Part shown: in pieces, positions 417-54,857 of the stretch | Numbering within the stretch: the stretch's first letter is position 1 | Layout of the letters: the number at the start of each line of letters is the position of its first letter | Assembly (NCBI RefSeq): GCF_006345805.1 | Contig: NC_043008.1 | Coordinates: 14,508,001 to 14,572,000 of the forward strand | From: Octopus sinensis | Lineage: Eukaryota | Length of the DNA: 64,000 bases | Reading direction: 5' to 3' | Notes under the pieces: model-generated | Told to the model about the DNA's origin: nothing | Database searches by the model: none | The model's input: the letters and a program-made list of their open reading frames with translations, nothing else | Made by a program: the position numbers and the translations under genes

Positions 417-466
<50 letters not shown>

Positions 467-2564: not shown

Positions 2565-2595
<31 letters not shown>

Positions 2596-2827: not shown

Positions 2828-2875
<48 letters not shown>

Positions 2876-3109: not shown

Positions 3110-3246
<137 letters not shown>

Positions 3247-4599: not shown

Positions 4600-4940
4600 A
4601 ATACTGAGGCACTGGCATACGTAACACACACTGCTTAAGTACCAATCTTGAGAAATTAGGCTTCTGAAAACCAGAAGAGAGAAAGCTGATTCGAAGACTA
4701 CAGATCGAAGCCATCATATATACTTAAACATTAAGCTTCTGGAAGGTTTTACAGATTTATACAGTACCAGTGATGGCTTCGATCTGTAATCTTCGAATCA
4801 GCTTTCTCGTGCATATATGCATATATGCACGAGAATACATACATAATGCAAAACATACAAATCTACACATATACATACATACCCTGTTGATGTTGTTGAA
4901 ATTCCGATGAAGGAACCTTAGGTCTGGAGTAGAAACCGGC
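4600..4940 (+). mobile_element. R4/Dong-like LINE 3' end with an internal inversion
   Basis: LEKLGF.KPEERKLIRRLQIEAI on +; its continuation TGTV.ICKTFQK is on -; the 3' UTR matches 11900-11960. Confidence 0.7.
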
Positions 4941-6690: not shown

Positions 6691-6758
<68 letters not shown>

Positions 6759-7078
6759 TAAATGAAATAGAACATATGCATATATATAAACATATATGTA
6801 CGTACCTACCTCTACATGTACATATACACGCATATATGAGTACAGGACACCAAAGGGACGTCGAACACAAAGAGAAACGAAAACATAGACACAAACCAAA
6901 GGAACTGGACATTTTTTTTAAAACAACAAAAAATGGAGTACAGGACAATTAACACAACGAAAAAAACCCTTCTTCAGTCGCTAAGGTTTCATCTACTCTA
7001 CGTTTATATATACCGGAGTAAACACATAAATGTAAAACAAGGTGGAAAAAAGAATACTCAAACACCCGGGGTAGAGTA

Positions 7079-7240
7079 ATATGCTTTATTTAAAAGCAGC
7101 AGAAATTCAACAAAACCAGTTACTCGGAGTTTCACATTCCCGTTCGTCGGACAGTTTTTGTTAACAAAAACTGTCCGACGAACGGGATCGTGAAACTCCG
7201 AGTAACTGGTTTTGTTGAATTTCTGCTGCTTTTAAATAAA

Positions 7241-7246
<6 letters not shown>
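7079..7246. repeat. 168-bp near-perfect zero-spacer palindrome (Penelope-pLTR-like)
   Basis: Centre GTT|AAC at 7162/7163; only two mismatched positions between the arms. Confidence 0.9.
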
Positions 7247-7314
<68 letters not shown>

Positions 7315-7327
7315 ATATGTATGTATG

Positions 7328-7380
<53 letters not shown>

Positions 7381-7403
7381 ATGTATATATATATGTGTGT
7401 ATG

Positions 7404-7452
<49 letters not shown>

Positions 7453-7496
7453 TATATATATTATATATATATATATATATATCTATATATATATAT

Positions 7497-7568
<72 letters not shown>

Positions 7569-7599
7569 AGCCTACTGACAATTCTACCTGTGTATATTT

Positions 7600-9330: not shown

Positions 9331-9339
9331 TTATCGGTT

Positions 9340-12040: not shown

Positions 12041-12075
<35 letters not shown>

Positions 12076-12110
12076 TACTTACATACATACAGACAGACAG
12101 ACAGACATAC

Positions 12111-12141
<31 letters not shown>

Positions 12142-12265
12142 CATACATACATACATACATACTCCGTTGTTGATGTTGAAATTCCAATAAAGGAGCCTTG
12201 GATCTAGGGTAGAAACCGGCTCTTTCTCTATTGGCAAGAAATCTTGAAATAAAACTTAACAATGA
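9340..12265 (+). mobile_element. Degenerate R4/Dong-like (RLE-type) non-LTR retrotransposon, with a SINE inserted at ~9835-10175
   Basis: EQAAGKKGVWGCAEQLLINK, WLDYKKSFDSV, HCFFVDDLKLFA, YLGVDE and CRLCG; C-terminal IQSITGTVKTCK; (CATA)n tail. Confidence 0.8.
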
Positions 12266-12721
12266 CATACATATATACATACATACATACGTACATATAT
12301 ACATACATACGCACATGCATACATACATACATACATACATACATACATACATACATTCATACATTCATACATACATACATACATACACACATACATAAAT
12401 ACAGACATACATACATACATACATACATATATACATACATACATCCATACATACATACATACATACATCCATACATACAGACAGACAGACAGACATACAT
12501 ACATACATACATCCATACATACATACATACATACAGACAGACATACATCCATACATACATACATACATATATACATACATACATATACATACATACATCC
12601 ATACATACAGACAGACAGACAGACATACATACATACATACATCCATACATACATACAGACATACATACATACATACATCCATACATACATACATACATAC
12701 AGACATACATACATACATACA

Positions 12722-12755
<34 letters not shown>
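11965..12755. repeat. Compound (CATA)n/(CAGA)n microsatellite
   Basis: Direct reading. Similar tracts at 6420-6560, 10190-10300 and 13290-13440; (CTAT)n at 17065-17240. Confidence 0.95.
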
Positions 12756-12924
12756 GGCGCAGGCATGGGTGTGTGGTAAGATGCTTGCTTGCCAACCACA
12801 TGGATCCGGGTTCAGTCCCATTGCGTACACTTTATCTTCTACTATAGCCTCGGGCCGACCAAAGCCTTGTGGGTGGATTTGGTAGACGGAAATTGAAAGG
12901 ATGCCTGTCTTCTCTGTATGTGTA

Positions 12925-13001
<77 letters not shown>

Positions 13002-13699
13002 AAGAGAGAAAGAAAGAGAGAGTGTGTGTGTATTTGTGTTTGTGTCCCCTCACCACCACAACTTGACAACCGGTGCTGGTGTCTTTACGTTCCCGTAACT
13101 TAGCAACTTAGCAGTTCAGTAAAGAAACTGCTAGAATAAGTACTAGGCTTTAAAAAATTAAATTGTGGAAGGTCGATTCATTTGACTAAAAAAAAAAATT
13201 CAAAGTGGTGCCCCAGCATGGCCGCAGTCTAATGACTGAAAGAAGTAATAAATAAAAGATCGCGCGCGCGCACACACACACACAAAGACATACATACATA
13301 CATACAGACAGACATACTTACATACATACATCCATACATACATATACACATACATACATACATACATGCATGCATACATATATACACACACACACACATA
13401 CATACATATATACATACATACATACATACATACGCACACACAGACAGACAGATTCCTATATAACCGCAAAACGTGGTGGTTACGGTTGGAATGCCTTTGA
13501 TCAATTGTTATTGGAAGACGTTAACAAAATATTTGAACAGGATTTAAAAACCGGTGAACCACCAGTTTTATGTAAGAGCGGTGAACTAAATGCGAATGTT
13601 TTGGCATGAAATTCCGTCCAGGTCAACTTTATCTGTTATGCTTCCTGAATCGATAAAATAAAGTACTAAAACAAGTTCTAGAAATGGTGTAACGCTTTA

Positions 13700-14085
13700 G
13701 TTTAACCTGTGTTAATGTTAGGGTTAGGGGTGGGAGAAAAGGGTTTCTGCTATCTTCAGAAATGTAAACAAAGCCACTTCCGGTAATTACGGTACCTATA
13801 CCGAAGCATAGCCTAAAACAAACCCTAACCCTAACCCTAACCCCCACCCCCATATATATATATATAAAAAAACACTGGCGTAACTTCGGTATACGTAGCG
13901 GAAGTACCGGATACATTTCAAGAAAGTGTTTTTTTTTAATATATATATGGGGTGGTTAAGGGTTAGAGGTGGGAGAAAAGGGTTTCTGCTATCTTCAGAA
14001 ATGTAAACAAAGTCACTTCCGGTACCTACGGGACGTATACCGAAGGATCGCCAAAGCACTTTCTTGAAATGTATCCGGTACATGT
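13700..14085. mobile_element. Compound MITE cluster with (CCCTAA)n and ETS-like motifs, upstream of putative SCO exon 1
   Basis: Internal unit shared with 59780-59939; 25-bp inverted repeat at 13904-13928/14057-14081; AACCCT repeats at 13820-13842. Confidence 0.65.
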
Positions 14086-17509: not shown

Positions 17510-20380
17510 TGCTTTATGTTGTGTCTCTAATTTAACTGTTAAGCTGATAGAATACTTAAGCAACATGGATTAGCAACCATTATCCCTGCTTATGCACCTC
17601 AACCAGGGCTACCTGATCAACAGAAAAACCGATTTTATGACACCCTCTTGCAGACTACCTTGTCGACAAATGACAGGGACCTTCTCTTTGTGGCTGGCGA
17701 CTTCAGTGGGTATGTTGGACAACATGCAGGGGGCTTCCATGGTATACATGGTGGCTATGGATTTGGTCCCTGCAATGAGGAGGGAACCAAGCTGCTAGAG
17801 TTCTATGATGCAAATGATCTTATGGTCTGTATTACTATCTTCAGGAAACCTGCCAGTCACCTGTTCACCTACCATTCTGGTGGACACACTAGTTAGATTG
17901 ACTACATTCTTGCCAGGAAACGGGCAAGATGGCCACTTATAAATGCCAAAACCTTCCCAGGTGAAGAATGCACCCCACAACATAGGTTAATAATTAGTGA
18001 CTTCAGGACCAAGGCTAAATAGATGACCAGCATGGAAAAGAAGGGTCTGGAAGTTTAAGGGTCCAGAGATTGAGAGACGTATTACTCGAAGCTTTTGACG
18101 GAAAAGAGGAGGATATAGCATCACATAATGCGGAAGACAACTGGAGGTTCCTACAGGACAACCTGTTGAGGGTTACTGAACAGATCTGTGGCTAGTGCAA
18201 AGTCCCCTCTCGACCTAAGGTAACATGGTGGTGGAACAATGTAGTTGAAAGGGCCATTATGGAAAAGAAACAGGTGTGGAAGGACTGGAAGAATGGTGGT
18301 AGCTAGGAACTTTATCTTATCTCCAGAAGGGAAGCTAGGAGACAGGTGTACTTAGCCAGTGAGGAAGCAGATAAGAAAAATTTGCCAATGTTCTGTGTCA
18401 TGAGGACCAAAGACTTGAAATGTTTCGTGTTGCAAGACAGTGTGTGAGAGAGAATCATGATGTCATAGGAGAGAAATGTGTCTGCATGGGTGATAGCTCA
18501 CTTGCATTTAATGAGGCTGCAAAGAGAGAGACTTAGAGATGCCATTATGAAAGGTTGTAAATGAAAAGAATGAATGAGAGAAAGAGAGTCTACCAAATGT
18601 CGACCCAGCAGAGGGTCCAGCTATCCAAATTGACAGTAGCTTGGTAGATAAAGCAATTAAGGGTATGAAGATGGGGAAAGCCCCTGGCCCATCAGTAATC
18701 ACCGCAGAGGTGCTTAAAATATCTGGCAGTGTGAGCTATAGTCTGGTCACCTGCATAGTCAATCAGGTGATACATGGAGTCATACCCAATGCCTGGTGTA
18801 GCAGCACCATAGTCAACTGCTACAAAGGTAAAGGTGATGCATTAGATATGAATAATTACAGAGGTATCAAATTGTTGGATAAGGTGATGAAAGTCACAGA
18901 GAGGGCCATAGCCCAACTAATTAGGGAGACAGTTTAGATGACAAACACTACTGATGTTATATTTCTGGTAAGACAGTTGCAGGAGAAATACCTAGCTAAA
19001 GATAAACCTCTGTACTTGGCTTTTGTTGACATGGAGAAAGCTTTTGACAGGGTCCCCCAATCCCTTATCTGGTGGTCAATGCAGAAAATAGGGATAGATG
19101 AGTGGTCAGTGAGAGCTGTACAAGCCATGTACAGGGATGCTGTCAATAAGGTGAGGGTTGGCAACAAGTATAGTGAAGAATTCCAGGTAGAAGTAGGGGT
19201 CCACCAAGGATCAGTCCTCATCCCCCTCTTATTCATCGTGGTCCTCCAGGCAATAACAGGAATTCAAGACAGGCTGCCCATGGGAGCTCCTCTATGCTGA
19301 TGACCTTGTTCTAATAGCTGAATCACTATCAGAACTAGAGAAGTTTCTGGTGTGGAAACAAGGTCTAGAATTGAAGGGCCTTAGAGTCAATCTAGCAAAA
19401 ACCATAGTTTTAGTAAGTAGGAAGGCAAACAAATCACAAATCCCTTCAGGTAGATGGCCTTGCTCGATCTGTAGAAAAGGCGTAGGTAGAAATTCCGTAA
19501 GATGTACCTGGTGTAGGCTATCGACACATAAGAGGTGCAACAATATCAAAGGAAGGCTAACTGAGAAGATAGTTTTTGTGTGGCTAAAAACCATTAGTTG
19601 ATAGCTTCTGTTACCTAGGTGACCAAGTCAGTAGTGGGGGTAGATGCTCTGAGAGCGTAGCTGCTTATAATAAGGATAGCCTGGGCAAAGTTCAGAGAGC
19701 TCCTACCTCTGCTGGTAACAAAGGGCCTCTTGCTGAGAGTGAAAGGTAGACTGTATGACATGGAGAAAGCGTTTGACAGGGTCCCCCAATCCCTTATCTG
19801 GTGGTCAATGCAGAAAATAGGGATAGATGTAGCGGCGAGCTGGCAGAAACGTTAGCACGCCGGGTGAAATGCTTAGCGGTATTTCGTCTGCGTTACGTTG
19901 TGAGTTCAAATTCCGCTGAGGTCGACTTTGCCTTTCATCCTTTCGGGGTCGATAAATTAAGTACCAGTTACGCACTGGGGTCGATGTAATCGACTTAATA
20001 CCTATGTATGTCCTTGTTTGTCCCCTCTGTGTTTAGCCCCTTGTGGGTAATAAAGAAATATGTATGACATGCATGTAAACAGCCATGCTACATGGCAGTG
20101 AAACATGGGCTGTGACTGCTGAGGACATGAAAAGAAGCTAGTATGCTGCGTTGGATGTGTAATGTCTGTGCATACACGACAGTGTAAGTGCCCTGACAGA
20201 AAAGATGGACATAAGAAGCATCAGATGTGGTATGCAAGAGAGATGACTGCTGGTATGGTCATGTGTTGCATATGGATGAGGACAGTTGTGTGGAAAAGTG
20301 TCACACCCTAACAGTGAAGGGAACCTGTGGAAGAGGTAGACCCAGGAAGACCTGAGGTGGTGAAGCATAACCTTTGGAGA
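17510..20380 (+). mobile_element. Degenerate RTE-clade LINE (APE endonuclease + RT), interrupted by a SINE
   Basis: AYAPQ, VAGDF.G.VG and IDYIL (endonuclease); GKAPGP, NYRGIKLL, FVDMEKAFDRVP, GVHQGSVL and LYADDL (RT); many stops and frameshifts. Confidence 0.95.
19830..20060 (+). mobile_element. tRNA-derived SINE family A; other copies at ~14978-15197, 15206-15302(-), 32485-32720, 36537-36762, 42545-43060, 53095-53225(-), 61495-61690, 63815-64000
   Basis: GGCGAGCTGGCAGAA (A box), GAGTTCAAATTCC (B box), core GCCTTTCATCCTTTCGGGGTCGATAAATTAAGTACC, 3' AAAGAAATA. TSDs visible, e.g. AGAATATCGG at 36527 and 36763. Confidence 0.9.
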
Positions 20381-37985: not shown

Positions 37986-38240
37986 GTGAGTCACCGAAAC
38001 ATTTCAATTTTATTTCGCACTCAAAGTGAATATTGCATTAGAATGCACAATACTGCATTATTTATAACGAGAGGACATGTACTGCATTAAAGAACTCGTT
38101 TACCTCACTGAACACCAGAACTGTCAGATCATGTGACCTACCTCTTACTTGGGCTTGTCAGTGACAGACAGCCAGCTAGACATAGCAGCCGATTCCTCTG
38201 TCAGTAATATAGAGAATCTATCCCGGTGTTGGTTGCAAGT

Positions 38241-38580
38241 GAAGGCATATGGCTCAGTGGTTAGAGCGCCAAGCTCACAATCATGAGGTAGTGAGTTCAA
38301 TTCCCAGACCAGGCTCTATGTTGTTTTCTTGAGCAAGACACTTTATTTCACGTTGCTCCAGTTCTCTCAGCTCTAGAAATGAGTAACAATGCCACTGGTG
38401 CCAAGCTGTAGCAGCCTTTCCTTTGGACAACATCGGTGGCCAGGAGAGAGAAGAGGCTGATATGCATGAGCAACTGCTTGTCTTCCATAAACAACCTTGC
38501 CTGGACTTGTGCTTCAGAGGGTAGCTTTCTAGGTGCAATCCCATGGTCATTCATGACCAAAGGGGGTCTTTACCCTTTTT
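38241..38580 (+). mobile_element. tRNA-derived SINE family C (second copy ~40210-40545)
   Basis: TGGCTCAGTGGTTAGAGC…GAGTTCAATTCCC head; shared body ending CATGGTCATTCATGACCAAAGGGGGTCTTTAC. Confidence 0.8.
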
Positions 38581-39007
38581 TAATTGGTTGCAAATACCCT
38601 GTGAGCATATCGAAAATAATTAAAGCGACAGAAGCAGTGTTAATACCAAAGTAATATTTATCTCCCACTTATGATGGATGTTTGTGTTAGAACACACAAT
38701 ACTGTATTATTTGACATGAGAGGACTTCTCATATGGACTTGAGGCATATAAAAGAACTCCAGTTTATATTGCTGTAGGCGTAGGAGTGGCTGTGTGATAA
38801 GTAGCTTGCTTACGAACCACATGGTTCCAGGTTCAGTCCCACGACTACGATTACAATTTCACTTGGCTTGATAAGTCTTCTCAGCACAGAACAAAAATCA
38901 TTGTGATGCTGAAAATAAAAGTGTTTTTTTTTTCTTTTTGCTTTCCCTATTTTTTCTGATATCCAAATAAACATATATTTTAATATTGAACTATTTCTCT
39001 CTTTTAG

Positions 39008-39100
39008 AAAAGAATCCTAATGTTCCGAATGTGCAGCCACTGTTTATTACAGTTGATCCAGAAAGAGACACTGTTGATGCCATTAAATTATATGTGAATG
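39008..39100 (+). CDS. SCO1: SCO exon ([31 protein letters not shown])
   Basis: [11 protein letters not shown] motif of the SCO family. CTTTTAG| acceptor and |GTAAGT donor, phases 1-1. Confidence 0.96.
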
Positions 39101-39683
39101 GTAAGTCCCATCTTGAAAGAAATTCTTATTAATCCTTTCGTTACCGTATTTCTGTTGCGATGTTCTGTGTTTCTCTCAATTAATTGTAAATATAACAGAA
39201 TTTAGTAAAATAACTTAGTTATCATTAAGCTAGTGTTAGGAACATAAATCGTGACTAAGGTGGAAGATTTTAATCCAAAACTTATGAAAACAAGACATTT
39301 GTACTCAGAGCCAGAACCGGTTTCAGCCGGGTTGGTAACGAAAGGGTTAAGAAGACAATATTTTATTTGATATTTCCAGTCACTGTGTAAGTGTGTGTGT
39401 AGTATTTCCTGTGCATACAGTTAGATATCAGACTGTTGCTGGTGAAGTTTGAGCTCTACACAGTATCATCATCCAATCTACTTCCAGTGAAGTGGTGTGC
39501 TTACTAACGTACTTAGTAGGATTACTAGTTATAATATACAGAGCAAAGGTAGGAATAAGCAGCATAAACACAAGATGCAATTTCCAAAGTACTGTTTGTT
39601 TGTGTTCCTGTGCTTGTCTGGAGAGCCCCACCTCTACAGAGGAAGTTTTATATCTGATCCCATATGTTTATATATGCCAAACT

Positions 39684-39980
39684 GGAGGCGCAATGGCCCA
39701 GTGATTAGGGCAGCGGACTCGCGGTCGGAGGATCGCTGTTTCGATTCCCAGACCGGGCGTTGTGTGTGTTTATTGAGCGAAAACACCTAAAAGTTCCACG
39801 AGGCTCCGGCAGGGGGTAGTGGCAACCCCTGTTGTACCCTTTCATCCCAACTTTCTCACTCTTTCTTGAGTAACGCTGCAATGGACTGGTGTCCTGTCCA
39901 GCTGGGGGGAACACATAGAAACCGGGGAACCGGGCCCATGAGCCTGGCTAGGCTCGAAAAGGGCACATAAATAAATAAAT
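39684..39980 (+). mobile_element. tRNA-derived SINE family D (reverse copies ~34405-34660, 51995-52372)
   Basis: GGAGGCGCAATGGCCCAGTG…GTTTCGATTCCCAGACC head; the reverse complement is seen at 52260-52372. Confidence 0.8.
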
Positions 39981-41162
39981 ATGCCAAACTCACCTTAGGA
40001 ATACATATACCAATATAATTTCAGTTGAACTATGACTAAAAAACACATTTATTCTGCGAAAACATATTCTTTTTTATTATTCATACATATAAACACATCT
40101 AATAAAATTATCTCCATTTGTTTTAATTACACAATATATGTGTATTCAAAAGAAAATCCTGATGCATTTTCAGTTTTTTCTCAATATTTTTCACATATAC
40201 GTATGTGTGTGAAGCTGCATTGCTGTGGTTAGAGCATCAGATTTACAATCACGTTGTAGTGAGTTCGATTCCCAGACTGGGCTGTATGTTGTGTTCTTGA
40301 GCAAGACACTTTATTTCACATCGCTCCAGTTCACTCAGCTGTGGAAATGAATTGCAACGTCACTGGTGCCAAGCTGTATCAGCCTTTGCCTTTCCTTTGG
40401 ATAACATCAGTGGCATGGAGAGGGGAGGCCAGTATGCACGGCCGACTACTGGTCCTCCATAGACAACCTTGCCCAGACTTGTGCCTTGGAGGGAAACTCT
40501 CTAGTGCTATCCCATGGTCATTCATGATCAAAGGGGGTCTTTTACATAGCATCTTCCTCTGTTAACGTCCATTTTCCATGCTGGCATGGGTTGGACTCTG
40601 AAATGTGTGACCTTGTCATATATAATGTATGTGTAACTTTTTGTCCAGTTGTCCATAATGTACCGTTGGTGACCAAAAGGTCACCAACGGTACATTATGA
40701 CAAATATATATCCAGCTCAGGAGCACCACCAGTATAAATGTGTGTATTGAACCTTTATACATAAGTCTTTATGCCGCAAAATAGAAAAAAGTGTGGATGT
40801 AAAATTCATAAAGGGGAGTGAACTCTCGAAAGGGTCGTAACTCTTGTAAATTAACAGAAATATAGCATCAGTGGTGATTCTACCCAATACAAAACCAAAC
40901 TACATCTCATTTAGACTAACTGTTTTCCTAATTAGTTGGCCTATGACCCTCTCCATGACTTTCATCACCTAATCCAGCAATTTCATACCCCTTGGATCAT
41001 TTTTTTAACTAACCCTTTCAAAGAAATGCCCCAGCATGGCTACAATCCAATGACTGAAAAAGATAAATACAGGATTTTTATTTATTTATTTTTTTCTTAT
41101 AAATATTTTGGCAATTTTATTGATTTTCTTCCATTCTGATACCTATTATCATATCTTTTCAG

Positions 41163-41278
41163 AATTTTCACCCAAACTGTTGGGTCTTACCGGAGACAAA
41201 GAAAGAATTCATCAGGCAACAAGAGCTTATCGTGTCTATTACAGTTCTGGACCGAAAGATGAAGACAATGATTACATC
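41163..41278 (+). CDS. SCO1: SCO exon ([39 protein letters not shown])
   Basis: EFSPKL.GLTG and AYRVYYS.GPKDED.DYI motifs. TTTCAG| acceptor and |GTAAGA donor, phases 1-0. Confidence 0.97.
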
Positions 41279-43104
41279 GTAAGATTCTTTACTTTAACCC
41301 TTTCGTTACTGTATTTATTTTGAGATGTTCTGTGTTTCTTTAAATTATTTTAAATATAACAAAGAATTTAGTAAAATAACTTGCTGGTGGCACGTAAAAA
41401 GCACCATCCAACCGTGGCCGTCTGCCAGCCCCATCTGGCACCTGTGCTGGTGGCACGTAAAAAGCACCCACTACACTCACGGAGTGGTTGGCGTTAGGAA
41501 GGGCATCCAGCCATAGATACATTGCCAGATCAGACTGGGCCTGGTGCAGCCTTCTGGCTTCCCAGACCCAAGTTGAACCATCCAACCGATGCTAAACGAT
41601 GATGATGATGAACTTAGTTATCATTAAGCTAGTGTTAGGAACATAAATTGTAACTAAGGTTTGGTGGAAGATTTTAATTCAGAACTTATGAAAACAAGAC
41701 ATTTGTACTAAAGAGCCACAGCCGGTTTCAGCTGGGTTGGTAATGAAAGAGTTAATGTCAATTCAAAGACTAGACAAAGCAGCCTGGCTACTGTGATGTC
41801 AAGTCTGCACATGTCGCTATCCTTTCCTGCATATTTGAGCAATGATAATGGCTTTATTCAATCTCCAATTTCTCCATATGGTGTGAAGAAAGAAATACAA
41901 GACAAACCATTGTTTTGTTTTCACTTCTGTATTTCATTTTACATTGTAAAAAGCACCATCCAAACGTGGACTGTGCCAGTGGCACATGACCTGCAGTGCT
42001 TGAGGAGACCTATTGAGTCAAGTACATCAACATCAAAATAAATATCAAATGGAAATTGTAGCTGTGATACCTGTGCCTGTGGCACGTAAAAAGCACCAAC
42101 TGATCATGGCTGCTGCTAGCTCCCCCCCCCCCGGCACCTGTGCCGGTGGCACGTAAAAAGCACCCACTACACTCACGGAGTGGTTGGCGTTATGAAGGGC
42201 ATCCAGCTGTAAAAACACTGCCAGATCAGACTGGAGCCTGGTGCAGCCTTCTGGCTTCCTAGACTCCGGTCGAACTGTCCAACCCATGCTAGCATGGAAA
42301 ACAGACGTTAAACTATGATGATGATGACAAGAAGGCTTTTGGTAGTCTGTTACATCAACTCCAATTCCCAACTGGTACTTATTTTATTGATCCTGAAAGG
42401 ACGAAAGGCAAAATTGACCTTGGCATAATTTGAACTCAGAACATAACGACAGACAAAATGTTGCCAAGTATTTCATCCAGCATGCCAACAATTCTGCCAG
42501 CTCACTGCCTTAATCTCTAATTTAATATTAATTATTGTTTTAAGGTGGCAAACTGGCAGAAACGTTAGCACGCTGGGCGAAATGCTTAGCAGTATTTCAT
42601 CTGTCTTTACCATTCTAAGTTCAAATTCCACCGAGGTTGACTTTGCCTTTCATCCTTTCGGGGTTGATAAATTAACATCATTTACATTATTTACAGTTAA
42701 CGGATATTTGTCATACCCTCCAGCCTTCATCAGGTGTCTTGGGGAAATTTCGTACCTGGGTTCTCATTCCTAAGGTATTTTTCAATATTATTATTCAGGT
42801 CACTAACAGGAAAAAAACCTTAGGAATGAGAACCCAAAATTTCTCCAAGACACCTGATGAAGGTTGGAGGGTATATCAGCCAAAACATTGTGTTAACAAC
42901 AAACAAGATGAGGACAAATATCCGTTAACTGTAAATAATGTACATAAATTCCAAATCTCTTAAATATAGAACTGTATCGATAAATTAAGTACTAGTTCCG
43001 TAATGGGGTCGATCTAATCGACTGACTCCCTCTCCCAAAATTTCGGGCCTTGTGCCTAAAGTAGAAAAGAATATTAATTATTGTTTTGTCTTTTTTTTTG
43101 GCAG

Positions 43105-43239
43105 GTGGACCATACTATTATCATGTACCTGATAAACCCAAAAGGTGACTTTGTAGATTATTTTGGTCAGAACCGAACCGCTGAAGACATTTATAATTCT
43201 ATAACATTGCATATGAAAAAGTATGAATTTAATAATTAA
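43105..43239 (+). CDS. SCO1: SCO terminal coding exon ([44 protein letters not shown])
   Basis: Conserved copper-ligand His in VDHTIIMYL. Stop TAA at 43237-43239; AATAAA at 43306 and 43316. Confidence 0.97.
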
Positions 43240-46725: not shown

Positions 46726-49288
46726 ATTTTGCTTAAGCTTAGAAATACTAATAACCAGATCTTAAAACTCAATAGACAAATGCTTTTAGAGTAAAGTGAT
46801 AGACGAGTATAGAGCAAAATATAAATTATTGAATAACAAGAAAACCAGAGTTAAGTAATCCCCTTCATTAGCTTACAGCTGTTTTTGCTACAAATTCTGC
46901 ATTCAGAGCTGAATGCTTTAGCAACATTCTACAGCTTTCTCGTTATGTGTGTAAGAAATGAACTCACAACCTCACATTCGTAAGCTCAACGCTCTAACCA
47001 CTGAGGCATGCGCCTTCACCCAACTATATATATATATATAAAAGTACAAAGTGAGATAGGGGTTATGAGTGTAACCCACTATGGGATATCATTTATCCAA
47101 TATACTGCCAGTAAAGTACCCATAAAGGCTGATACATAAATGCTAAGAATTGGAATGCAATTAATTCCTTTATTGTATTAGATGGGCGAAGGTAAAATGT
47201 TTTACCTCAAATTCATAATACAAAATAAGAAAATGGAAGAATAGATTTCTTTCAATCATCAACTACCAGATAATACCAATTCATATAATTTATTAACTAA
47301 TTATTTAGACCGTCCAACCCATGCTAGCATGGAAAGCGGACGCTAAACGATGATGATGATGATGAATAGGAACATCCAAATCCAACAGAATAATACAGAA
47401 TTAGTTAATAAATTATATGAATTGGTATTATCTGGTAGTTGATGATTGAAAGAAATCTATTCCTCATTTTCTTATTTTGTATATATATATATATATATAT
47501 ATATATTCGTGCACTTTCTTATAGAAAACTGAGGAGAAATAGTGTTGTGTTAGTGACAAATAGTCTTCAGAGACAACAGTCACGTTAATGAACCCATTAG
47601 TATGGCAATTATAACCATTTCATGGAATGAAATGGAAAAAAGGATAAAGAAAATACTTAGCCTTGTGGTCATTTATTAACTTTATTATTATTATTATTAT
47701 TATTATCATTAACAGCAACACTACAACACTGCCAAAATATTTTCAAATTTCATCTTATTGACAGGGGAAAGAAACTTTTAGCTATAGAAAAAAATACTGG
47801 GTTTCTATGCTGTTAAGGGAAGCAAAATACGAAGTTGTGACTTCAAGGATTTTATGGGGGAAATTAAAATTGGCTTGTGTATTCAACTCACAAGGAGCTT
47901 ATCTATCTTCTGTTGACGTTTGCTGTATTTAGTTGAAGGATACTTTGAAAGAAAAACTCCCAAACTTTTAGTTGAAACAAATGACCCAAATGGAAGACTG
48001 CACACATTGTGTATTGAGTGCATAGGGTTCTGTGAAATTGTTATCAGCAGTCTGCCTTGTTGGATGACAGCGTATTTGGAAGGCACAGGACATTAATGAG
48101 TGTTGAACATAATGGGACTGTAACAGTTGTGACAGATGATAATCGCTGGCTTGCTATGAGGATAGGAGTTTGTCAGAAGAACAGAGCTGCTGAAATAAAG
48201 GAAGTTATACAGGTTAATGACATTCACATCTAGCAAAACACTACAAATTTAGCGGATATGTAGGCAAAAATCAATGGAAATCGTGGTTGTGATCCCTGTG
48301 CTGGTGGCACGCAGGGGGCACCGTCCAAGCGTGGCCGATGCCAGCGCCGCCTTGACTGGCTTCTGTGCCGGTGGCACTTAAAGAGCACCAACCAATCATG
48401 GCCGTTGCCAGCCTCGCCTGGCACCTGTGCCGGTGGCACGTAAAAAGCACCCACTACACTCACGGAGTGGTTGGCGTTAGGAAGGGCATCCAGCTGTAGA
48501 AACACTGCCAGATCAGACTGGAGCCTAGTGCAGCCTTCTGGCTTCCCAGACCCCAGTCGAACCGTCCAACCCATGCTAGCATGGAAAACGGGCGTTAAAC
48601 GATGATGATGATGATATAGTCAATTAACTGACTCCAGTACATAACTGGTATTCACTTTAATGACCACCCCCACCTTTCCTTCCAGCAGGAATATAAATAA
48701 GGAAAGTTATACCATGCTAATAACAAGGACATCTGAGTTCATTATTTTTGCATTAGTTATGACATCTGAGTTTATCATTCATTAATAGTGTATATATATA
48801 CATACAATACATGGAATAAAGCTACTCTGAGTAGAATGACCAGCAATACTCTCTGAGTATGGAGTATACAAACAGAGGCTGTAGGGTGTGTTAGATAAAA
48901 TAACAGGTGTCCCGTGGACAGAAATGGTTAGAATGGATGCACAGAGGACAGCACCTGCATTGTTGAAGTAGTGATTATGTTTGAGTTTCATAGTATTCAA
49001 AAGAAGGTTCTAGAGTGTAGACATACATGACAGAAATCAATTTTTTCCATATGAATTTAGCTGCAAAGCTGTTCAAATTATTGAGACATGTTGAACACAA
49101 TACAAAATTTGCCGTTCACAGAGCCATCAATGTTTGTCAATAACAGTGGCCTTGTTGGTACAAAGTTGCAAATATTTCAGTATTTGTAGGTCCTATTGTA
49201 ACTATTTACAACAGTGATAGTCACAACTAGTATTTTCATTTGAAGATTTATTGCTGTTCACCTTATCATTAAGATCTGCTTCGATTTC

Positions 49289-49358
49289 TTAATTTACTTT
49301 GCAGGGATTTAGCAAAATAGGTAATTTTTCATTACTGAGTTTGTTGTTAGGAATATAA
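49289..49358 (-). CDS. Probable terminal coding exon of PAH gene (SYIPNNKLSNEKLPILLNPCKVN*)
   Basis: ATTTTTAG| acceptor after a 126-nt intron, phase 2 compatible, TAA at 49291-49289. Confidence 0.45.
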
Positions 49359-49484
49359 CTAAAAATTAAATTAAAATTCTTATACAAAATTATATTAATC
49401 TAAATTTGAACACAGTACTTTAAAGCAGTTGGTTTTGTATCACAGAAGCAGGTGAGGAAGTGTAATGAAAAAAAAAGCATTAAC

Positions 49485-49654
49485 CTGTCGTTAAATCCTT
49501 GTAGAACTACAGATGAAACACCGGAATAAGGGTTCACGTTACAGATGGAGTTGAAACTCTGGTCACAAGCAATTGGTTTCTTGGGCAGAAGGCTTAACAA
49601 GCAATGAGCCAAGTCATTGTTATCAGACAGCAACAGCTGAATATATTTCACCAC
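49485..49654 (-). CDS. Exon encoding C-terminal half of PAH domain plus tail (VVKYIQLLLSDNNDLAHCLLSLLPKKPIACDQSFNSICNVNPYSGVSSVVLQGFND)
   Basis: TCTTTCGTTGCAG| acceptor; only phase 0 is open, matching the upstream exon. DL...LLP resembles the PAH HPDL...FLP ending. Confidence 0.75.
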
Positions 49655-49889
49655 CTGCAACGAAAGACAGAAAATAGAACATCTAATATTCAACACAATA
49701 TTTTGCATAGGACATTCTCTCTTTCAATTCTTAAACTACCAAAATTTTAAGAAGAAACAAACATTCCATGAATTCTCCCCACAAATAAAATGATTTTACC
49801 TTTAATCTTATAATAATTCTGCTTGTTCTCCTATTACTTAGTCCGTCCATAATGCTTCCATGTGATTAGTTGAAGCAGGAATTTATTTT

Positions 49890-50515
49890 CCTTAATGCCT
49901 GCGCTGGTATGGTCATGTACTACGGATGGATGAGGAGAGATGTGTGAAGAAGTGCCACTCCCAAACAGTTGAAGGAATCAGGAGAAGAGGTAGACCCAGG
50001 AAGACATGGGATGAGGTGGTCAAGCATGACCTTCAAACGTTGGGTCTCACAGAGGCAATGACGAAAGACCGAGACCTCTGGAGATATGCTGTGACTGCGA
50101 AGATTCGACAAATAATGTGAGCTCATGGCTGTCTCCTGCACCAGCTTCACATAGAAGCCCCAGCCCTTCCAAAGTGCCTTGGATTGCAGGACGACCTACT
50201 GTACTTACCTTGTATCGTAGGGCGACCTGCTGTGCTTGAGGAGACCTATTGAGTCAAGTACATCAACATCAAAATCAAATGGAAATTGTAGTTGTGATAC
50301 ATGTGCTAGTGGCACGTAAAATGCACCATCCGATTGTGGCCATTGCCAGCCTCCCCTGGCACGTAAAAAGCACCCACTACACTCACAGAGTGGTTGGCGT
50401 TAGGAGGGCATCCAGCTGTAGAAACACTGCCAGATCAGACTGGAGCCTGGTGCAGCCTCCTGGCTTCCCAGACCACGGTCGAACCGGCCAACCCATGCTA
50501 AATGATGATGATGAT
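49890..50515 (+). mobile_element. RTE 3' fragment
   Basis: MDEERCVKKC…RRGRPRKTWDEVVKHDL…DRDLWRYAV plus the family tail. Confidence 0.9.
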
Positions 50516-51052
50516 GTATATAGTTTAGTGAAGTAAAATAGATACAGAATGTAATATAGCCTTATAAGTAGGAACTATTGATGATATAATTCTGACTTGT
50601 ATGAATAGATGCGATGAGCCTTCAGCTCAAAATTAGAAATTTGATGTCATATCATCATAATTTCACATCCAATGTTCATGCTGACATGGGTTGGATGGTT
50701 TAACCAGGGATGGTAAGCTAAGGGGCTGCACCAGACTCCACTCTGATTTGACATGGTTTCTACGGCTGGATGCCCTTCCTAATGCCAACCACCCCAAGTA
50801 AATTTAATTCCAGTCAATCTATCTAATAATGTTAGGAGATTCTACATGGTCATTGGTCCTGCTAGAAATAGTAACAAAATTCCCTCAAATCATATTCCCC
50901 TGTGAGACAGGCCAGATTGGATAATGTAGTCCCAGATATGCATAAAGACGGGATGTTTATGCATGAATGGTTTTTGTCACATGACTGCTCAGTAAAACAG
51001 ACTTGGAACTAAACAACAAAAATAGATAACACCAAGCAGTAAATATTTGTAA

Positions 51053-51665
51053 GGCAGCGAGCTGGCAGAAACGGTAGCACGCTGGGCAAAATGCTTAGCG
51101 GTATTTCGTTTGCCATTACGTTCTGAGTTCAAATTCCACCAAGGTTGACTTTGTCTTTCATCCTTTCAGGGTCAATTAAATAAGTACCAGTTACGCACTG
51201 GTGTCAATGTAATCGACTTAATCCGTTTGTCTGTCCTTGTTTGTCCCCTCTCTGTGTGTTTAGCCCCTTCTGGGTAGTAAAGAAATAGGTTTTTCATCTG
51301 CCGCTACGTTCTGAGTTCAAATTCTGCCGAGGTCGACTTTGTCTTTCATCCTTTCGGGGTCAATTAAATAAGTACCAGTTACACACTGGAGTCGATATAA
51401 TCAACTTAATCCGTTTGTCTGTCCTTGTTTGTCCCCTCTGTGTGTGTGTAGCCCCTTGTGGGTAGTAAAGAAATAGGTATTTCGTCTGCTGCTACATTCT
51501 GAGTTCAAATTCTGCCGAGGTCGACTTTGTCTTTCATCCTTTCGGGGTCAATTAAATAAGTACCAGTTACGCACTGGGGTCGATATTATCGACTTAATCC
51601 GTTTGTCTCTCCTTGTTTGTCCCCTCTGTGTGTGTGTGCAGCCCCTTGTGGGCAGTAAAGAAATA
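51053..51665 (+). mobile_element. SINE A concatemer: one head and three tandem bodies (period ~188 bp) inside a 15-bp TSD
   Basis: AGTAAATATTTGTAA at 51038-51052 and 51666-51680; bodies start near 51100, 51288 and 51476. Confidence 0.9.
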
Positions 51666-51701
51666 AGTAAATATTTGTAATTTAAAAGACTTGCTCCTTA
51701 C

Positions 51702-51850
51702 CTTTTTAGCCGAATTTAGGCAATGGTTATAGTCATGCAAAACAGCAACGAGGGTCCGAAATACTTCAGGTTTCTCAAAGTAGTTGTTTTTGATCATATT
51801 AAGCAGTGCTACTAATGGAGATATTTCCAATCGAGTCACATGAATTCCAG
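51702..51850 (-). CDS. Exon encoding N-terminal half of a PAH domain (GIHVTRLEISPLVALLNMIKNNYFEKPEVFRTLVAVLHDYNHCLNSAKK)
   Basis: Long polypyrimidine tract with AG acceptor, donor AAG|GTAAGG, open frame, Sin3 PAH-like hydrophobic pattern. Confidence 0.8.
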
Positions 51851-52384
51851 CTCAACAAAATAAAAGAAAAAAAGAAAATTTATTTCCCTTAGAAATACTA
51901 ATTTCTTACATAGGCATAAGACCACAAGGTTACAAACGAGAGAGAGAATAAGACCCTGTGATTGGACACATTTATTGGTTTTGATTATTTGGAAGCACTC
52001 CGTCGGTTACAACGATGAGGGTTCCGGTTGATCCGAATCAACGGAACAGCCTGCTCGTGAAATTAACGTGTAAGTGGCTGAGCACTCCACAGACACGTGT
52101 ACCCTTAACGTAGTTCTCAGGGATATTCAGCGTGACACAGAGAGTGACAAGGCTGGCCCTTTGAAATACAGGTACAACAGAAACAGGAAGTAAGAGTGAG
52201 AGAAAGTTGTGGTGAAAGGGTACAGCAGGGATCACCACCATCCCCTGCCAGAGCCTCGTGGAGCTTTAGGTGTTTTCGCTCAATAAACACTCACAACGCC
52301 TGGTCTGGGAATCGAAACCGCGATCCTATGACCGCGAGTCCGCTGCCCTAACCACTGGGCCATTGCGCCTCCACTAAATTGGTT

Positions 52385-52760
52385 TTGATTAGGCTTTGGA
52401 TCAATAAAGGATCTTGTCGACTTCCTTAAGCCCTTTGCTCCTTATGGAGCATAAGCCATCAATGACTTTTCTCCACTGCTACCACCTCGGGGCTGGTGAA
52501 GAGGAATTCATCTTCCAGGTCCTGTTGCTTTTGAATTGTCATCAAAGAAGATGTAACTTGGCTCAGCTTTCCAGATGGTAGCTTTGGTCCTTATGCAACC
52601 CCATTCTTACCTCTGCAAAAAGGTGGTCCAAATTAGTCTGGCCTCAATCCTTTGCTCTGTCCAGCATGAGAAGCCCTATCAAGAGCTTGCCCTCCAGTGG
52701 CATAGCTCTCGGTCACTGAGGCACACAGGCCACCACATCACATCAAGGACTGGACATTGT
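52385..52760 (-). mobile_element. Degraded LINE (RTE-like) 3' end
   Basis: The minus strand ends GATGGCTTATGCTCCATAAGGAGCAAAGGGCTTAAGG, resembling RTE-type termini; only broken ORF remnants. Confidence 0.4.
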
Positions 52761-52810
52761 GACAGCAATAATGGATTAGGTATACGATATAACATACACG
52801 GTTTTCTTAC

Positions 52811-52886
52811 AATCGTTAATAATGCTCAATAAAATTACTTCAACTGACAGTCGACCCTGGTTTTGTAGGTTTATTTCACTGGACAT
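52811..52886 (-). CDS. Probable ATG-containing exon of single-PAH-domain gene (MSSEINLQNQGRLSVEVILLSIIND)
   Basis: ATG preceded by in-frame stops (TAG CAG TAA ATG). Strong donor T|GTAAGA in phase 1 matches the next exon. Confidence 0.55.
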
Positions 52887-54857
52887 TTACTGCTACGGTA
52901 TTCCTCTCTTGGTAGTCGAAAAATAAGATCCAGGAATTTCATATTTGGCAGCATATAACTGTTCCACCATCATTTAACATCTGTTTTCTATGCTGGCATG
53001 GGTTGGACGGTTTGCCCAGAGGTGGCCAGCTGGAGAGCTGCACCAGACTCCAGTTTGATTTGGCATAATAATAATAATAATAATAATTGTTATTTCTTTA
53101 TTGCCCACAAGGGGCTAAACATACAGAGGACAAACAAGGACAGACAAAGGGATTAAGTCGATTACATCGACCCCAGTGCGTAACTGGTACTTAATTTATC
53201 GACCCCGAAAGGATGAAAGGCAAATTATTGTATACAGTGCTCAGGTGCACCACAACTTGTCAAAAAGTGCGTTTCTACAACTGGATGCCCTTCCTAACAC
53301 CAACCACTTTACAGAGTGTGCTGGGTGCCTTTTTATGCGGTGGCACAGATGCTTTTTATGTGAGCCAGCATGGGTACTGCTCACGTGGACTGGCATGAGT
53401 GCTTCTTACATAGACCCACATGAAGCAGCACAGGTGCTTTTTACATGGACCAACATGAAACACAGTATTAAACTACAATTCTATATTAATGCTTTTAAAT
53501 TAGGATAGCACAAAGAAACTTTTACACTATAAATCTGAAAGACTAGCTTAATTTAAATCATTAATTGAAAAAAACTGGCAAGAATCATCATCATCATCAT
53601 TTGATAGTCTTTTTTTCATGCTGACATGAGATTAACAGTTTGTCAGGAACCAACAAACCAGAGGGTTGTGGCAAGCTCCAATGTCTGCTTTGGTTTGGTT
53701 TCTACAGATTTCTACAGATTCCTAATGCCAACCACATTAGAGTGAATTGGGTGCTTTTTTTCATAGAACTACCACTAGTGGAGTTACCATGTACTTACAA
53801 AAAAAAATCCCCTCAACTGCATGGGGTATAGTATTAAAGGGTGTGAAAATATAAAAGAGGGACAGGAACAGGTATCTTGCCTAAGAAGATGTGAATACAT
53901 CATAGCTTCATCAGCTGAAAAGAGAGAGAAATGATAACGGTTGTACCCTCAAGATACAAGGTGAATATGAGAGAATAGGGGGTAGAGAAACACAAAGGAC
54001 GGATGGGTAACCGTGCTAGAATGATTAGAGATGAGGGTTTGAGGTGAAAGCCTTGTAATATTCAAATCAATGTAATCAAAGAACTAGCGGATAAAACAAT
54101 TATGAACCCTTAATTTAGAAATAAAGGTTCCCAGTTCTGAATTAGTCTGAAGCTAATGTATATATCTAAGAATATAACACCTGGTGGTAATCAAGGTCAA
54201 AGTCAATCAAAACACAGTAAATATAAATATTAAATATTTCATCTCTAATGATAATGCTAATTACCTGAGAATTATTATTATTATGCCTAATTTTAAAAAT
54301 AAAGTCAAGTACTCACACATTTTTGTTCTGGGGGGTTTTTGTTGTTTTTATTTTTAGTTTTTTTCAAACTGAAGAAAATGAAGACAGCCTGTAGAAGTAT
54401 GACGAAAACAATTTTTTAAAATTAAAAATTCTGGGGGTTTTTTTTTTTTTATTTTTAAAAATACAACTCATTATAGATTTTATGACATATTCTTAGCAGC
54501 CAGTTTGATGAATATATTAATCAAACCAACCACCGAGAATGTGTCATAATATTAAAATCAGTTGATCCTATTTTCCCCCCAGACCCCCACTATAACTTTC
54601 TAGAAAAATGTACACCCCCAACTCTATTTTTAATATTTCATAATAATACACTTTCCTTAAAGAAAAATCCACACTCGGGCATTAGAATAGTGCCATACTG
54701 TAGCAAAGTCTTCACACAGTGTGCTTGGCTGGAAGGATTGGTTTGGTTAGGCTGAGTACAGGTATAGTATGTTTGCTGTGAAAATAAGACACTGCTTATA
54801 AACCCCCAAGGAACAGTGGGCTTATAAGCAGTATCTCTGTGGATAATTAAATGTTTA

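What the first reader, a model, noticed from the sequence alone, without database searches (positions are those of the whole stretch)
49289..52886. Stand-alone single-PAH-domain microprotein gene (~154 aa) convergent with SCO
Four minus-strand exons with GT-AG sites and matching phases (1,0,2) give MSSEINLQ…LVALLNMIKNNYFEKPEVFRTLVAVLHDYNHCLNSAKKVVKYIQLLLSDNNDLAHCLLSLLP…PCKVN*. By eye, the 62-residue core aligns without gaps to Sin3A PAH1 as I recall it (ALSYLDQVK.QF..QPQVY.DFL.IMKEF…GVI.RV.QLF..HPDLI..F..FLP). PAH domains normally occur as multiple copies in large scaffolds (Sin3, GON4L) that bind amphipathic SID helices of repressors. A lone, divergent PAH without an HDAC-interaction domain could act as a decoy or adaptor (inference). 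The ORF track shows only fragments of it.
Basis: partly seen in the sequence, partly recalled or inferred. Interest (0 to 1): 0.75.

Follow-up and report, generated by a model that had tools for sequence, protein, structure and literature searches.

The report
Octopus single-PAH-domain small protein gene
This is a real, already annotated but uncharacterised octopus gene for a 139-residue protein made of one divergent Sin3-type PAH peptide-binding domain plus a short conserved tail.

Summary
The window is Octopus sinensis chromosome DNA.

Exon 1 carries a frameshift, a stop codon and a lost splice donor in O. vulgaris. Neither exon is found in Argonauta. The coding sequence really starts at 54320 and ends at 48093.

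The gene is under strong purifying selection between Octopus and Argonauta (dN/dS 0.02), tail included.

Residues 8-75 form a divergent PAH-type four-helix bundle:
- The Pfam PAH hit is below threshold (17-18 bits against a cut-off of 21.3).
- A family profile finds only Sin3/Pst PAH domains in the PDB (E down to 6e-6).
- AlphaFold gives four confident helices.
- The ten best Foldseek matches are all Sin3 PAH1, PAH2 or PAH3.

Homologues are uncharacterised bivalve and gastropod proteins of 320-1030 aa. They have the same N-terminal domain and the same intron position. They also have a long disordered region and a C-terminal hairpin motif that octopus lacks.

The protein is therefore stand-alone, and not an internal piece of Sin3 or GON4L. 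A decoy or adaptor role remains an inference.

The parts
54317..54320 (-). First coding exon. Only ATGT is coding (Met1 plus the first base of Ser2), followed by donor GTGAGT. The 5'UTR lies upstream and its extent is unknown.
   Evidence: The gene span 54320..48093 is 6228 bp, which equals the RefSeq gene range. Argonauta has the same ATGT|GTGAGT.
51702..51850 (-). Coding exon 2 (149 nt, residues 2-51).
   Evidence: It is 86% identical in nucleotides to Argonauta. tblastn hits from all the long mollusc homologues land here.
49485..49654 (-). Coding exon 3 (170 nt, residues 52-108).
   Evidence: It is 81% identical in nucleotides to Argonauta.
48093..48189 (-). Last coding exon (residues 108-139, SSSVLLTNSYPHSKPAIIICHNCYSPIMFNTH, plus the TAA stop). 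An alternative NAGNAG acceptor at 48186 gives the 138-aa isoform X2.
   Evidence: It is 87% identical in nucleotides and 94% in amino acids to Argonauta, and conservation stops 3 nt after the stop codon. The independent O. bimaculoides model also uses it (P0004).
51702..51833 (-). PAH-like domain, first half (residues 8-51). The model places helices at 8-24 and 29-40.
   Evidence: AlphaFold pLDDT is above 90 here.
49583..49654 (-). PAH-like domain, second half (residues 52-75). The model places helices at 49-59 and 64-73, and the domain ends in the LLSLLP motif, the counterpart of F..FLP.
52811..52886 (-). This is NOT part of the gene. It is intron 1 sequence carrying a chance ORF and a chance GT.
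   Evidence: O. vulgaris has a frameshift, a stop codon and a GT>AT donor here. Argonauta has no counterpart.
49289..49358 (-). This is NOT part of the gene. It is intron 3 sequence.
   Evidence: It is absent from Argonauta. The RefSeq and O. bimaculoides models splice exon 3 to 48189 instead.

Best explanation
Shown:
- The locus is a functional protein-coding gene, RefSeq LOC115217825, on the minus strand with coding sequence from 54320 to 48093.
- It encodes a 139-aa, 15.5-kDa protein.
- Residues about 8-75 form a divergent paired-amphipathic-helix (PAH) four-helix bundle of the kind found in Sin3.
- Residues 76-139 form a strongly conserved Cys/His-containing tail that is predicted to be unstructured.
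- The gene is the octopod member of a family of uncharacterised proteins seen in molluscs. The other members have the same N-terminal domain, split by the same phase-0 intron.
- In those members a long last exon adds 250-950 residues, disordered in the one member modelled, including lysine-rich stretches that I read as NLS-like. That region also carries a conserved C-terminal beta-hairpin motif, SFPYxQxxxLPDG.
- In octopods the last exon is only 32 codons, and the hairpin motif is not detectable.

Inferred:
- Like other PAH domains, this one probably binds a short amphipathic helix of a disordered partner in the cleft between helices 1 and 2. The partner is most likely a nuclear transcription or chromatin regulator.
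- Without the long tail of its relatives, the octopod protein would keep partner binding but lack whatever the tail recruits.
- It would then act as a small adaptor, or as a competitor of longer PAH proteins. The mammalian Sin3B-293 short isoform has been proposed to work this way.
For: Gene and exons:
- The exon 2+3 translation is 100% identical to XP_029643366.2.
- The exon coordinates rebuild the 139-aa protein exactly.
- The gene span equals the RefSeq range.

Selection:
- Between Octopus and Argonauta only the three large coding exons are conserved.
- dN/dS is 0.023, with dN 0.030 and dS 1.29. It is about equally low for the PAH part (0.023) and the tail (0.020).

PAH identity:
- The Pfam PAH hit has E 0.003-0.006 and is the family most often matched by relatives, 5 of 20.
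- phmmer against the PDB gives 5 Sin3/Pst1 PAH entries first, and 11 of the 22 hits at E<=10 are Sin3/Pst.
- A profile of 15 family domains against the PDB gives 13 Sin3/Pst PAH entries first. Whole-sequence E is 6e-6, and 5e-4 for the single-domain chain 6xaw_A. The first non-PAH hit is at E 0.28.
- AlphaFold places four helices (8-24, 29-40, 49-59, 64-73) with pLDDT above 90.
- The ten best Foldseek PDB matches are all Sin3 PAH1, PAH2 or PAH3. Probability is 1.0 for the first three, and TM-score is 0.80 against 6xaw_A.

Family:
- An exhaustive phmmer search gave 24 hits. The named ones are from Pecten, Haliotis, Mytilus, Gigantopelta, Patella, Potamilus, Mercenaria, Solemya, Lottia, Mya and Batillaria.
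- In these proteins the domain sits at the extreme N-terminus.
- Lottia and Haliotis share the exon plan.
- Read-through ORFs all break after the same Lys.
- In the Gigantopelta model everything after the domain has pLDDT below 50, apart from a hairpin at 330-344 and two short stretches.

Analogue:
- Sin3B-293 has PAH1+2 and no HDAC-binding domain, and has been proposed as an antagonist (PMC3786298).
- PAH domains are known hubs for short motifs in disordered regulators (PMC7948954).
Against: - The Pfam PAH score is below the curated cut-off (16.8-17.8 bits against 21.3).
- The long relatives do not hit Pfam PAH at all when scanned whole.
- Foldseek E-values are weak (0.06 and worse) because the domain is small.
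- I could not inspect any transcript or junction reads, and no paper mentions the gene.
- No partner, subcellular location or expression pattern is known.
- The octopus protein has none of the lysine-rich, NLS-like stretches of its long relatives.
- The strong conservation of the tail implies a function of its own that this explanation does not account for.
Confidence: 0.8

Rival explanations
1. One reading: a 154-aa protein from four exons at 52886..52811, 51850..51702, 49654..49485 and 49358..49289.
For: All four exons have formally valid GT/AG sites, and the phases give an open frame of 154 codons.
Against: - Exon 1 is disabled three times over in O. vulgaris, by a 1-bp deletion, a TGA stop and a GT>AT donor change.
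- Neither terminal exon is found in Argonauta, whereas the RefSeq terminal exon is 94% identical in protein.
- Family members start 4-8 residues before helix 1, as the RefSeq model does, and have no 25-aa extension.
Confidence: 0.03
2. The exons are an internal part of a much longer protein such as Sin3, GON4L or a full-length mollusc-type relative, and the 139-aa model is a truncated annotation.
For: - Relatives in other molluscs are 320-1030 aa long.
- I could not inspect transcript evidence.
Against: - The stop codon is conserved in Argonauta, and nucleotide conservation ends 3 nt after it.
- O. bimaculoides has the same end in an independent annotation.
- No other part of the long relatives matches anywhere in the 64-kb window by tblastn.
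- The C-terminal motif HMM finds nothing in the six-frame translation of the window.
- Convergent SCO1 begins 4.85 kb downstream in all three octopods.
- The Met lies where the whole family starts.
Confidence: 0.07
3. The four-helix domain is not homologous to PAH. It is a generic or convergent helical bundle, or a different alpha-alpha hub such as TAFH or HHD, with a different binding mode.
For: - The Pfam score is below the gathering threshold.
- Foldseek E-values are 0.06 or worse.
- Small helical bundles can converge. The alpha-alpha-hub review itself calls the subgroups analogous folds (PMC7948954).
Against: - Three independent searches rank Sin3 PAH domains first, and two of them rank only PAH domains at the top.
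- The alignment runs gapless across all four helices.
- The alignment reproduces the PAH signature positions, PE.(F/Y)..(F/L)..(I/V)L.(D/T)Y and L...(F/L)LP.
- No TAFH, HHD, RST or NCBD structure appears among the Foldseek matches.
Confidence: 0.1
4. The gene is a decaying remnant of the long ancestral gene, with no function of its own.
For: It has lost the long region and the C-terminal motif that its relatives keep.
Against: - dN/dS is 0.02 at saturated synonymous divergence (dS 1.3) over the whole 139 codons.
- The frame, the start, the stop and all splice sites are intact in Octopus sinensis, O. vulgaris and Argonauta.
Confidence: 0.02

Closest known systems
PAH domains of Sin3 (PAH1/PAH2; Pfam PF02671), e.g. 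yeast Sin3 PAH2 (PDB 6xaw) and mouse Sin3B PAH2 (1e91)
   Same: - The same four-helix bundle, about 68 residues long.
- The alignment is gapless.
- It shares the motifs PE(V/I)(F/Y)..(F/L)..(I/V)L..Y and L...(F/L)LP.
- These are the best sequence, profile and structure matches.
   Different: - Identity is only about 20%, and the score is below the Pfam gathering threshold.
- The domain occurs once, at the extreme N-terminus.
- There is no HDAC-interaction domain, no Sin3 C-terminal domain and no further PAH copies.
Sin3B-293, the short mammalian Sin3B isoform
   Same: It is a PAH-only product without the HDAC-binding region, proposed to antagonise the full-length scaffold (PMC3786298). This is the closest functional analogue for a decoy reading.
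   Different: - It is a splice isoform of Sin3B itself and has two canonical PAH domains.
- The octopus protein is a separate gene from a different, divergent family and has one domain.
Uncharacterised mollusc proteins, e.g. Pecten maximus LOC117334105, Haliotis rubra LOC124289819, Lottia LOTGIDRAFT_232998
   Same: - They have a homologous N-terminal domain, 31-50% identical, with phmmer E from 1e-13 to 1e-4.
- The start position is the same.
- The phase-0 intron lies at the same place inside the domain, and the three-exon plan is the same.
   Different: - They are 320-1030 aa long, with a long region that is predicted disordered in the one member modelled, lysine-rich stretches and the SFPYxQxxxLPDG hairpin motif.
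- Octopus lacks all of these and has its own 64-aa tail.
GON4L / YY1AP1
   Same: They are animal non-Sin3 proteins that carry PAH repeats.
   Different: [quoted passage not shown] From my own knowledge it is a very large protein (over 2000 aa) whose PAH domains are internal.
- No such features are present here.

Membership tests
PAH domain (Pfam PF02671) | Score at or above Pfam's gathering threshold (21.3 bits) | tested here: not met
   The score is 16.8-17.8 bits, E 0.003-0.006. The long relatives scanned whole give no PAH hit at E<=1.
PAH domain (Pfam PF02671) | Profile-level sequence relationship to experimentally solved PAH domains across the whole domain | tested here: met
   The profile of 15 family domains finds 13 Sin3/Pst PAH entries first. 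E is 6e-6 for yeast Sin3 and 5e-4 for the single-domain 6xaw_A. The match covers profile positions 9-80.
PAH domain (Pfam PF02671) | Four-helix bundle with PAH topology | tested here: met
   The AlphaFold model has helices 8-24, 29-40, 49-59 and 64-73 with pLDDT above 90. The ten best Foldseek matches are all Sin3 PAH1, PAH2 or PAH3, with TM-score 0.80 and rmsd 2.7 A against 6xaw_A. This rests on a predicted structure, not a solved one.
PAH domain (Pfam PF02671) | Binds an amphipathic SID helix in the helix 1 / helix 2 cleft | not testable with these tools
   This needs binding experiments or complex modelling with candidate partners.
Sin3 corepressor family | Several PAH domains plus an HDAC-interaction domain and a Sin3 C-terminal domain | tested here: not met
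   The protein is 139 aa with one domain, and Pfam finds no other domain.
GON4L / YY1AP1 | Large protein with internal paired PAH repeats and a SANT/Myb domain | tested here: not met
   The domain is N-terminal and single, there is no SANT hit, and the stop codon is conserved at residue 139.
Mollusc N-terminal PAH-like protein family (unnamed, uncharacterised) | Homologous N-terminal domain at the protein start, split by a phase-0 intron after a Lys/Arg in the helix 2-3 loop | tested here: met
   The read-through ORFs P0006, P0019, P0020, P0022-25 and P0027 all break at this point.
Mollusc N-terminal PAH-like protein family (unnamed, uncharacterised) | Long low-complexity region (disordered in the one member modelled, P0011) and the C-terminal SFPYxQxxxLPDG hairpin motif | tested here: not met
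   The motif HMM gives no hit on the octopus or Argonauta protein, even at E<=1000. It gives only chance-level hits in the six-frame translation of the window. tblastn with the long relatives matches only exons 2 and 3.
Microprotein / small interfering protein concept | Small single-domain protein related to larger multi-domain proteins | tested here: met
   It is 139 aa with one domain, and its relatives are 320-1030 aa.
Microprotein / small interfering protein concept | Acts by titrating partners of the larger relatives | not testable with these tools
   No interaction or expression data are available. No long paralogue from octopus was seen among the 24 hits.

The most novel reading that the evidence does not exclude
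In the octopod lineage, shrinkage of the last exon turned a long, probably nuclear, PAH-plus-disordered-tail protein into a 15.5-kDa PAH-only protein with a new, tightly conserved Cys/His tail. This protein would now work as a natural microprotein. It would occupy the amphipathic-helix motifs of transcription regulators, so competing with Sin3-type scaffolds or with the ancestral partner network, or it would bridge those motifs to something bound by the new tail.
Probability: 0.2. Interest if true: 0.65.

Novelty: new variant of a known kind. Interest (0 to 1): 0.42.

Why it matters
- PAH domains are the docking sites through which Sin3 complexes are recruited by repressors.
- A divergent PAH family outside Sin3 and GON4L is seen here in bivalves, gastropods and cephalopods. 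The databases searched here record no Pfam domain for it, and sources name it only 'uncharacterized' or 'hypothetical'.
- The octopod member is a naturally minimised version. At 139 aa it is small enough for NMR or crystallography and for pull-downs, which makes it a convenient entry point to learn what the family binds.
- For genome annotation, the result attaches a domain assignment to LOC115217825 and its mollusc relatives.
- It is not a new kind of system. PAH-only proteins and PAH-only isoforms are already known.

Tried and rejected
1. I suspected that the octopus C-terminus (LLTNSYPHSKPAIIICHNCYSPIMF) was a degenerate copy of the family's SFPYxQxxxLPDG motif. An HMM of the motif from 8 species gave no hit at all on the octopus or Argonauta proteins. 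I rejected the idea as unsupported.

2. I looked for a hidden long exon or motif elsewhere in the 64-kb window. Neither the six-frame HMM search nor tblastn with 13 relatives found anything.

3. I tried synteny to prove orthology with the long genes. Lottia and Haliotis have an AMP-binding enzyme gene upstream. Haliotis and contig L012 have a cation-efflux gene downstream. None has SCO1 nearby. This was uninformative.

4. I tried to learn whether another cephalopod-like relative has a short or long form. The contigs carrying P0006 are from an unnamed species, 64% identical and sharing the short HDYNH loop. They hold only exon 2. The question remains unresolved.

5. The word-indexed homologue searches returned almost nothing beyond the octopus protein, with 1 and 3 proteins. 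The exhaustive phmmer search was the one that found the family.

6. A literature search for LOC115217825 and for 'PAH domain' plus 'microprotein' found no papers.

7. ARAGORN and Rfam found nothing in the window.

8. AlphaFold gave no confident structure for the tail, with pLDDT below 50. Whether the tail docks on the PAH cleft therefore cannot be said.
Full report
**What is in the sequence.** The window is animal DNA with 39% G+C and many dispersed repeats. Their joint translation of 105 aa is 100% identical to RefSeq XP_029643366.2. This is 'uncharacterized protein LOC115217825 isoform X1', 139 aa, recorded for both Octopus sinensis and O. vulgaris. An exact look-up places the gene on O. sinensis chromosome CM016870.1. 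The recorded gene range of 6228 bp equals window 54320..48093.

The RefSeq protein begins MSGIHV and ends SSSVLLTNSYPHSKPAIIICHNCYSPIMFNTH.
- The true first coding exon contributes only ATGT (54320..54317) before a GTGAGT donor.
- The true last coding exon is 48189..48093. A NAGNAG acceptor at 48186 explains the 138-aa isoform X2.
- These four pieces rebuild the 139-aa protein exactly.
- A blastn comparison of the whole gene region with Argonauta leaves only three collinear conserved islands: 51887..51697, 49657..49483 and 48195..48090. These are the three large RefSeq coding exons. Every other match is a dispersed repeat.
- The independent O. bimaculoides model (99 aa) also joins exon 3 to the RefSeq last exon.

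**Is it a real, constrained gene?** Yes.
- Between Octopus and Argonauta, synonymous sites are saturated (dS 1.29).
- Only 8 of 139 residues differ (dN 0.030, dN/dS 0.023).
- The ratio is about equally low in the domain (0.023) and in the tail (0.020).
- Start, stop and splice sites are intact in all three octopods.
- Introns differ by about 6-12% between O. sinensis and O. vulgaris, while the protein is identical.

**Is the core a PAH domain?**
- For the octopus sequence alone, the Pfam PAH model gives 16.8-17.8 bits (E 0.003-0.006). This is below the 21.3-bit gathering score.
- phmmer against PDB sequences nevertheless puts 5 Sin3/Pst1 PAH entries first, and 11 of its 22 hits are Sin3/Pst. 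The alignments are gapless over up to 65 residues.
- I aligned 15 family domains (A1) and searched the PDB with the resulting profile. The first 13 hits are all Sin3, Pst1 or Pst3 PAH entries.
- In that search, whole-sequence E is 6e-6 for yeast Sin3. The PAH2 alignment spans profile positions 9-80. E is 5e-4 for the single-domain chain 6xaw_A. The first unrelated hit is at E 0.28.
- The family consensus reproduces the PAH signature: ..(A/S)P(F/L).AL.NMIK.NY..KPEV(F/Y)..L.A(V/I)L.DY....Y(I/L)..LL.D..DLA..L..FLP.
- AlphaFold2, run with a 20-row alignment, gives four helices (8-24, 29-40, 49-59, 64-73) with pLDDT above 90. Residues 79-139 fall below 50.
- Foldseek against the PDB ranks ten Sin3 PAH1, PAH2 or PAH3 structures first. 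Probability is 1.0 for the first three. TM-score is 0.80 and rmsd 2.7 A against yeast PAH2 (6xaw_A). E-values are weak (0.06 or worse), as expected for a 70-residue helical domain.
- No TAFH, HHD, RST or NCBD structure appears among the matches.
- I conclude that this is a divergent member of the PAH fold and very probably of the PAH homology group. It cannot be called a Pfam PF02671 member by the curated cut-off.

**Is it stand-alone?** In octopods, yes, but it is not an orphan.
- An exhaustive phmmer search of 1.84 billion representative proteins found 24 hits.
- Named hits are uncharacterised proteins of bivalves (Pecten, Mytilus, Potamilus, Mercenaria, Mya, Solemya) and gastropods (Haliotis, Gigantopelta, Patella, Lottia, Batillaria).
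- The full-length ones are 320-1030 aa. The domain lies at the extreme N-terminus and starts 4-8 residues after the Met, as in octopus.
- Eight of them share a C-terminal motif, (N)L(S/T)xFPYxQxxxLPDGxxxxxxF.
- In an AlphaFold model of the Gigantopelta protein this motif is a beta-hairpin at 330-344. It is the main stretch after the N-terminal domain with pLDDT above 50.
- Many of these proteins also have lysine-rich stretches, which I read as NLS-like.
- Lottia and Haliotis have the same exon plan as octopus. One exon encodes helices 1-2, one encodes helices 3-4 plus a linker, and then comes the last exon. That last exon encodes about 350-390 residues there, against 32 in octopus.
- Many short ORF calls in unannotated contigs break at the same point, after a Lys or Arg and reading on into GT. 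This shows that the phase-0 intron inside the domain is conserved.
- The motif HMM finds nothing in the octopus or Argonauta protein, or in the six-frame translation of the window.
- tblastn with 13 relatives matches only exons 2 and 3.
- Convergent SCO1 ends at 43239, which is 4.85 kb beyond the stop codon. The same arrangement holds in O. vulgaris and Argonauta.
- The gene is therefore a truncated relative of a longer family. It is not a fragment of Sin3 or GON4L, and it is not a mis-annotated long gene.

**How it most likely works (inference).**
- PAH domains are alpha-alpha hubs. They bind short amphipathic helices of disordered transcription regulators in the cleft between helices 1 and 2 (PMC7948954).
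- The long mollusc proteins look like nuclear scaffold or adaptor proteins: a hub domain, a disordered region with lysine-rich stretches, and a conserved hairpin motif.
- The octopod protein keeps the hub and replaces the rest with a 64-residue tail that is as constrained as the domain. It could therefore bind the same class of partners without delivering whatever the long tail delivers.
- The closest described analogue is the mammalian Sin3B-293 isoform. It has PAH1+2 and no HDAC-binding domain, and has been proposed to antagonise full-length Sin3B (PMC3786298).
- Because the tail is so conserved, an adaptor role is at least as likely as a pure decoy role. In that role the PAH domain would bind one partner and the tail another.
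- Nothing here tests binding, location or expression.

**Comparison and novelty.**
- PAH-only proteins are not new in principle. [quoted passage not shown]
- The domain assignment is new relative to the database record. The precomputed Pfam field is empty, and the sources' names are 'uncharacterized' or 'hypothetical'.
- Also new are the recognition of a family seen across three mollusc classes with this N-terminal PAH-like domain, and the octopod reduction to 139 aa.
- I rate it a new variant of a known kind, of moderate interest.

**Dead ends.** I could not find orthology support from synteny. I could not determine the state of the gene in other cephalopods, because only exon 2 is present on the available contigs of an unnamed species. 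I could not inspect transcript evidence, found no literature on the gene, and could not model the tail confidently.

Noticed in passing
window about 38093..43239 (+): This is the SCO1 (PF02630) gene, convergent with the PAH gene. Its last exon reads ...[44 protein letters not shown] and ends at 43239. The same convergent arrangement is found in O. vulgaris and Argonauta hians.
   Followed up: partly
window 51100..51669 (intron 2 of the gene): Three tandem copies of a 188-bp unit, 91% matching. The unit is a SINE-like element with many dispersed copies in the window and in the Argonauta locus. O. vulgaris appears to have fewer copies, as its gene is 467 bp shorter.
   Followed up: partly
window about 52290..52370 (-), intron 1: A stretch that looks tRNA-like by eye (GGCGCAATGGCCCAGTGGTTAGGGCAGCGGACTCGCGGTCATAGGATCGCGGTTTCGATTCCCAGACCAGGCG). 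It is probably the head of a tRNA-derived SINE. ARAGORN does not call it, and Rfam has no hit in the window.
   Followed up: partly
P0001 residues 76-139 (window 49582..49485 and 48189..48096): The tail is predicted disordered but is as constrained as the domain (dN/dS 0.02). It contains Cys81, Cys89 and a C-x2-C (Cys127, Cys130) next to His119, His128 and His139, all conserved in Argonauta. AlphaFold hints at a weak hairpin at 125-134. It might be a small metal-binding knuckle, but this is pure speculation.
   Followed up: no
L010 (Lottia), L011 (Haliotis), L012 (unnamed ENA contig): The long gastropod homologues lie next to an AMP-binding (acyl-CoA-synthetase-like) gene upstream. In Haliotis and L012 a cation-efflux gene lies convergent downstream. 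This neighbourhood seems conserved in gastropods and is not seen in the octopods.
   Followed up: partly
P0011 residues 328-346 and equivalents in P0008, P0009, P0010, P0014, P0016, P0018, P0021: The conserved motif NL(S/T)xFPYxQxxxLPDGxxxxxxF lies near the C-terminus of the long mollusc proteins. It is modelled as a beta-hairpin with pLDDT about 78 inside an otherwise disordered region. It has no Pfam family, and its partner is unknown; it could be the protein's own N-terminal domain.
   Followed up: partly
window 18641..19300 (+): Two adjacent ORFs that look by eye like reverse-transcriptase fragments of a LINE-type retroelement, not checked against Pfam. The window as a whole is rich in microsatellite-like TATG/CATA arrays (1..14000).
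   Followed up: no
hit P0005 (1069 aa): The second-best phmmer hit, with 18 matched stretches, is a highly repetitive translated sequence (...HYYSHCLSSGERVGHLCALLLALPVV... repeated). I judge it a low-complexity artefact and not a relative, and I excluded it from all alignments.
   Followed up: no
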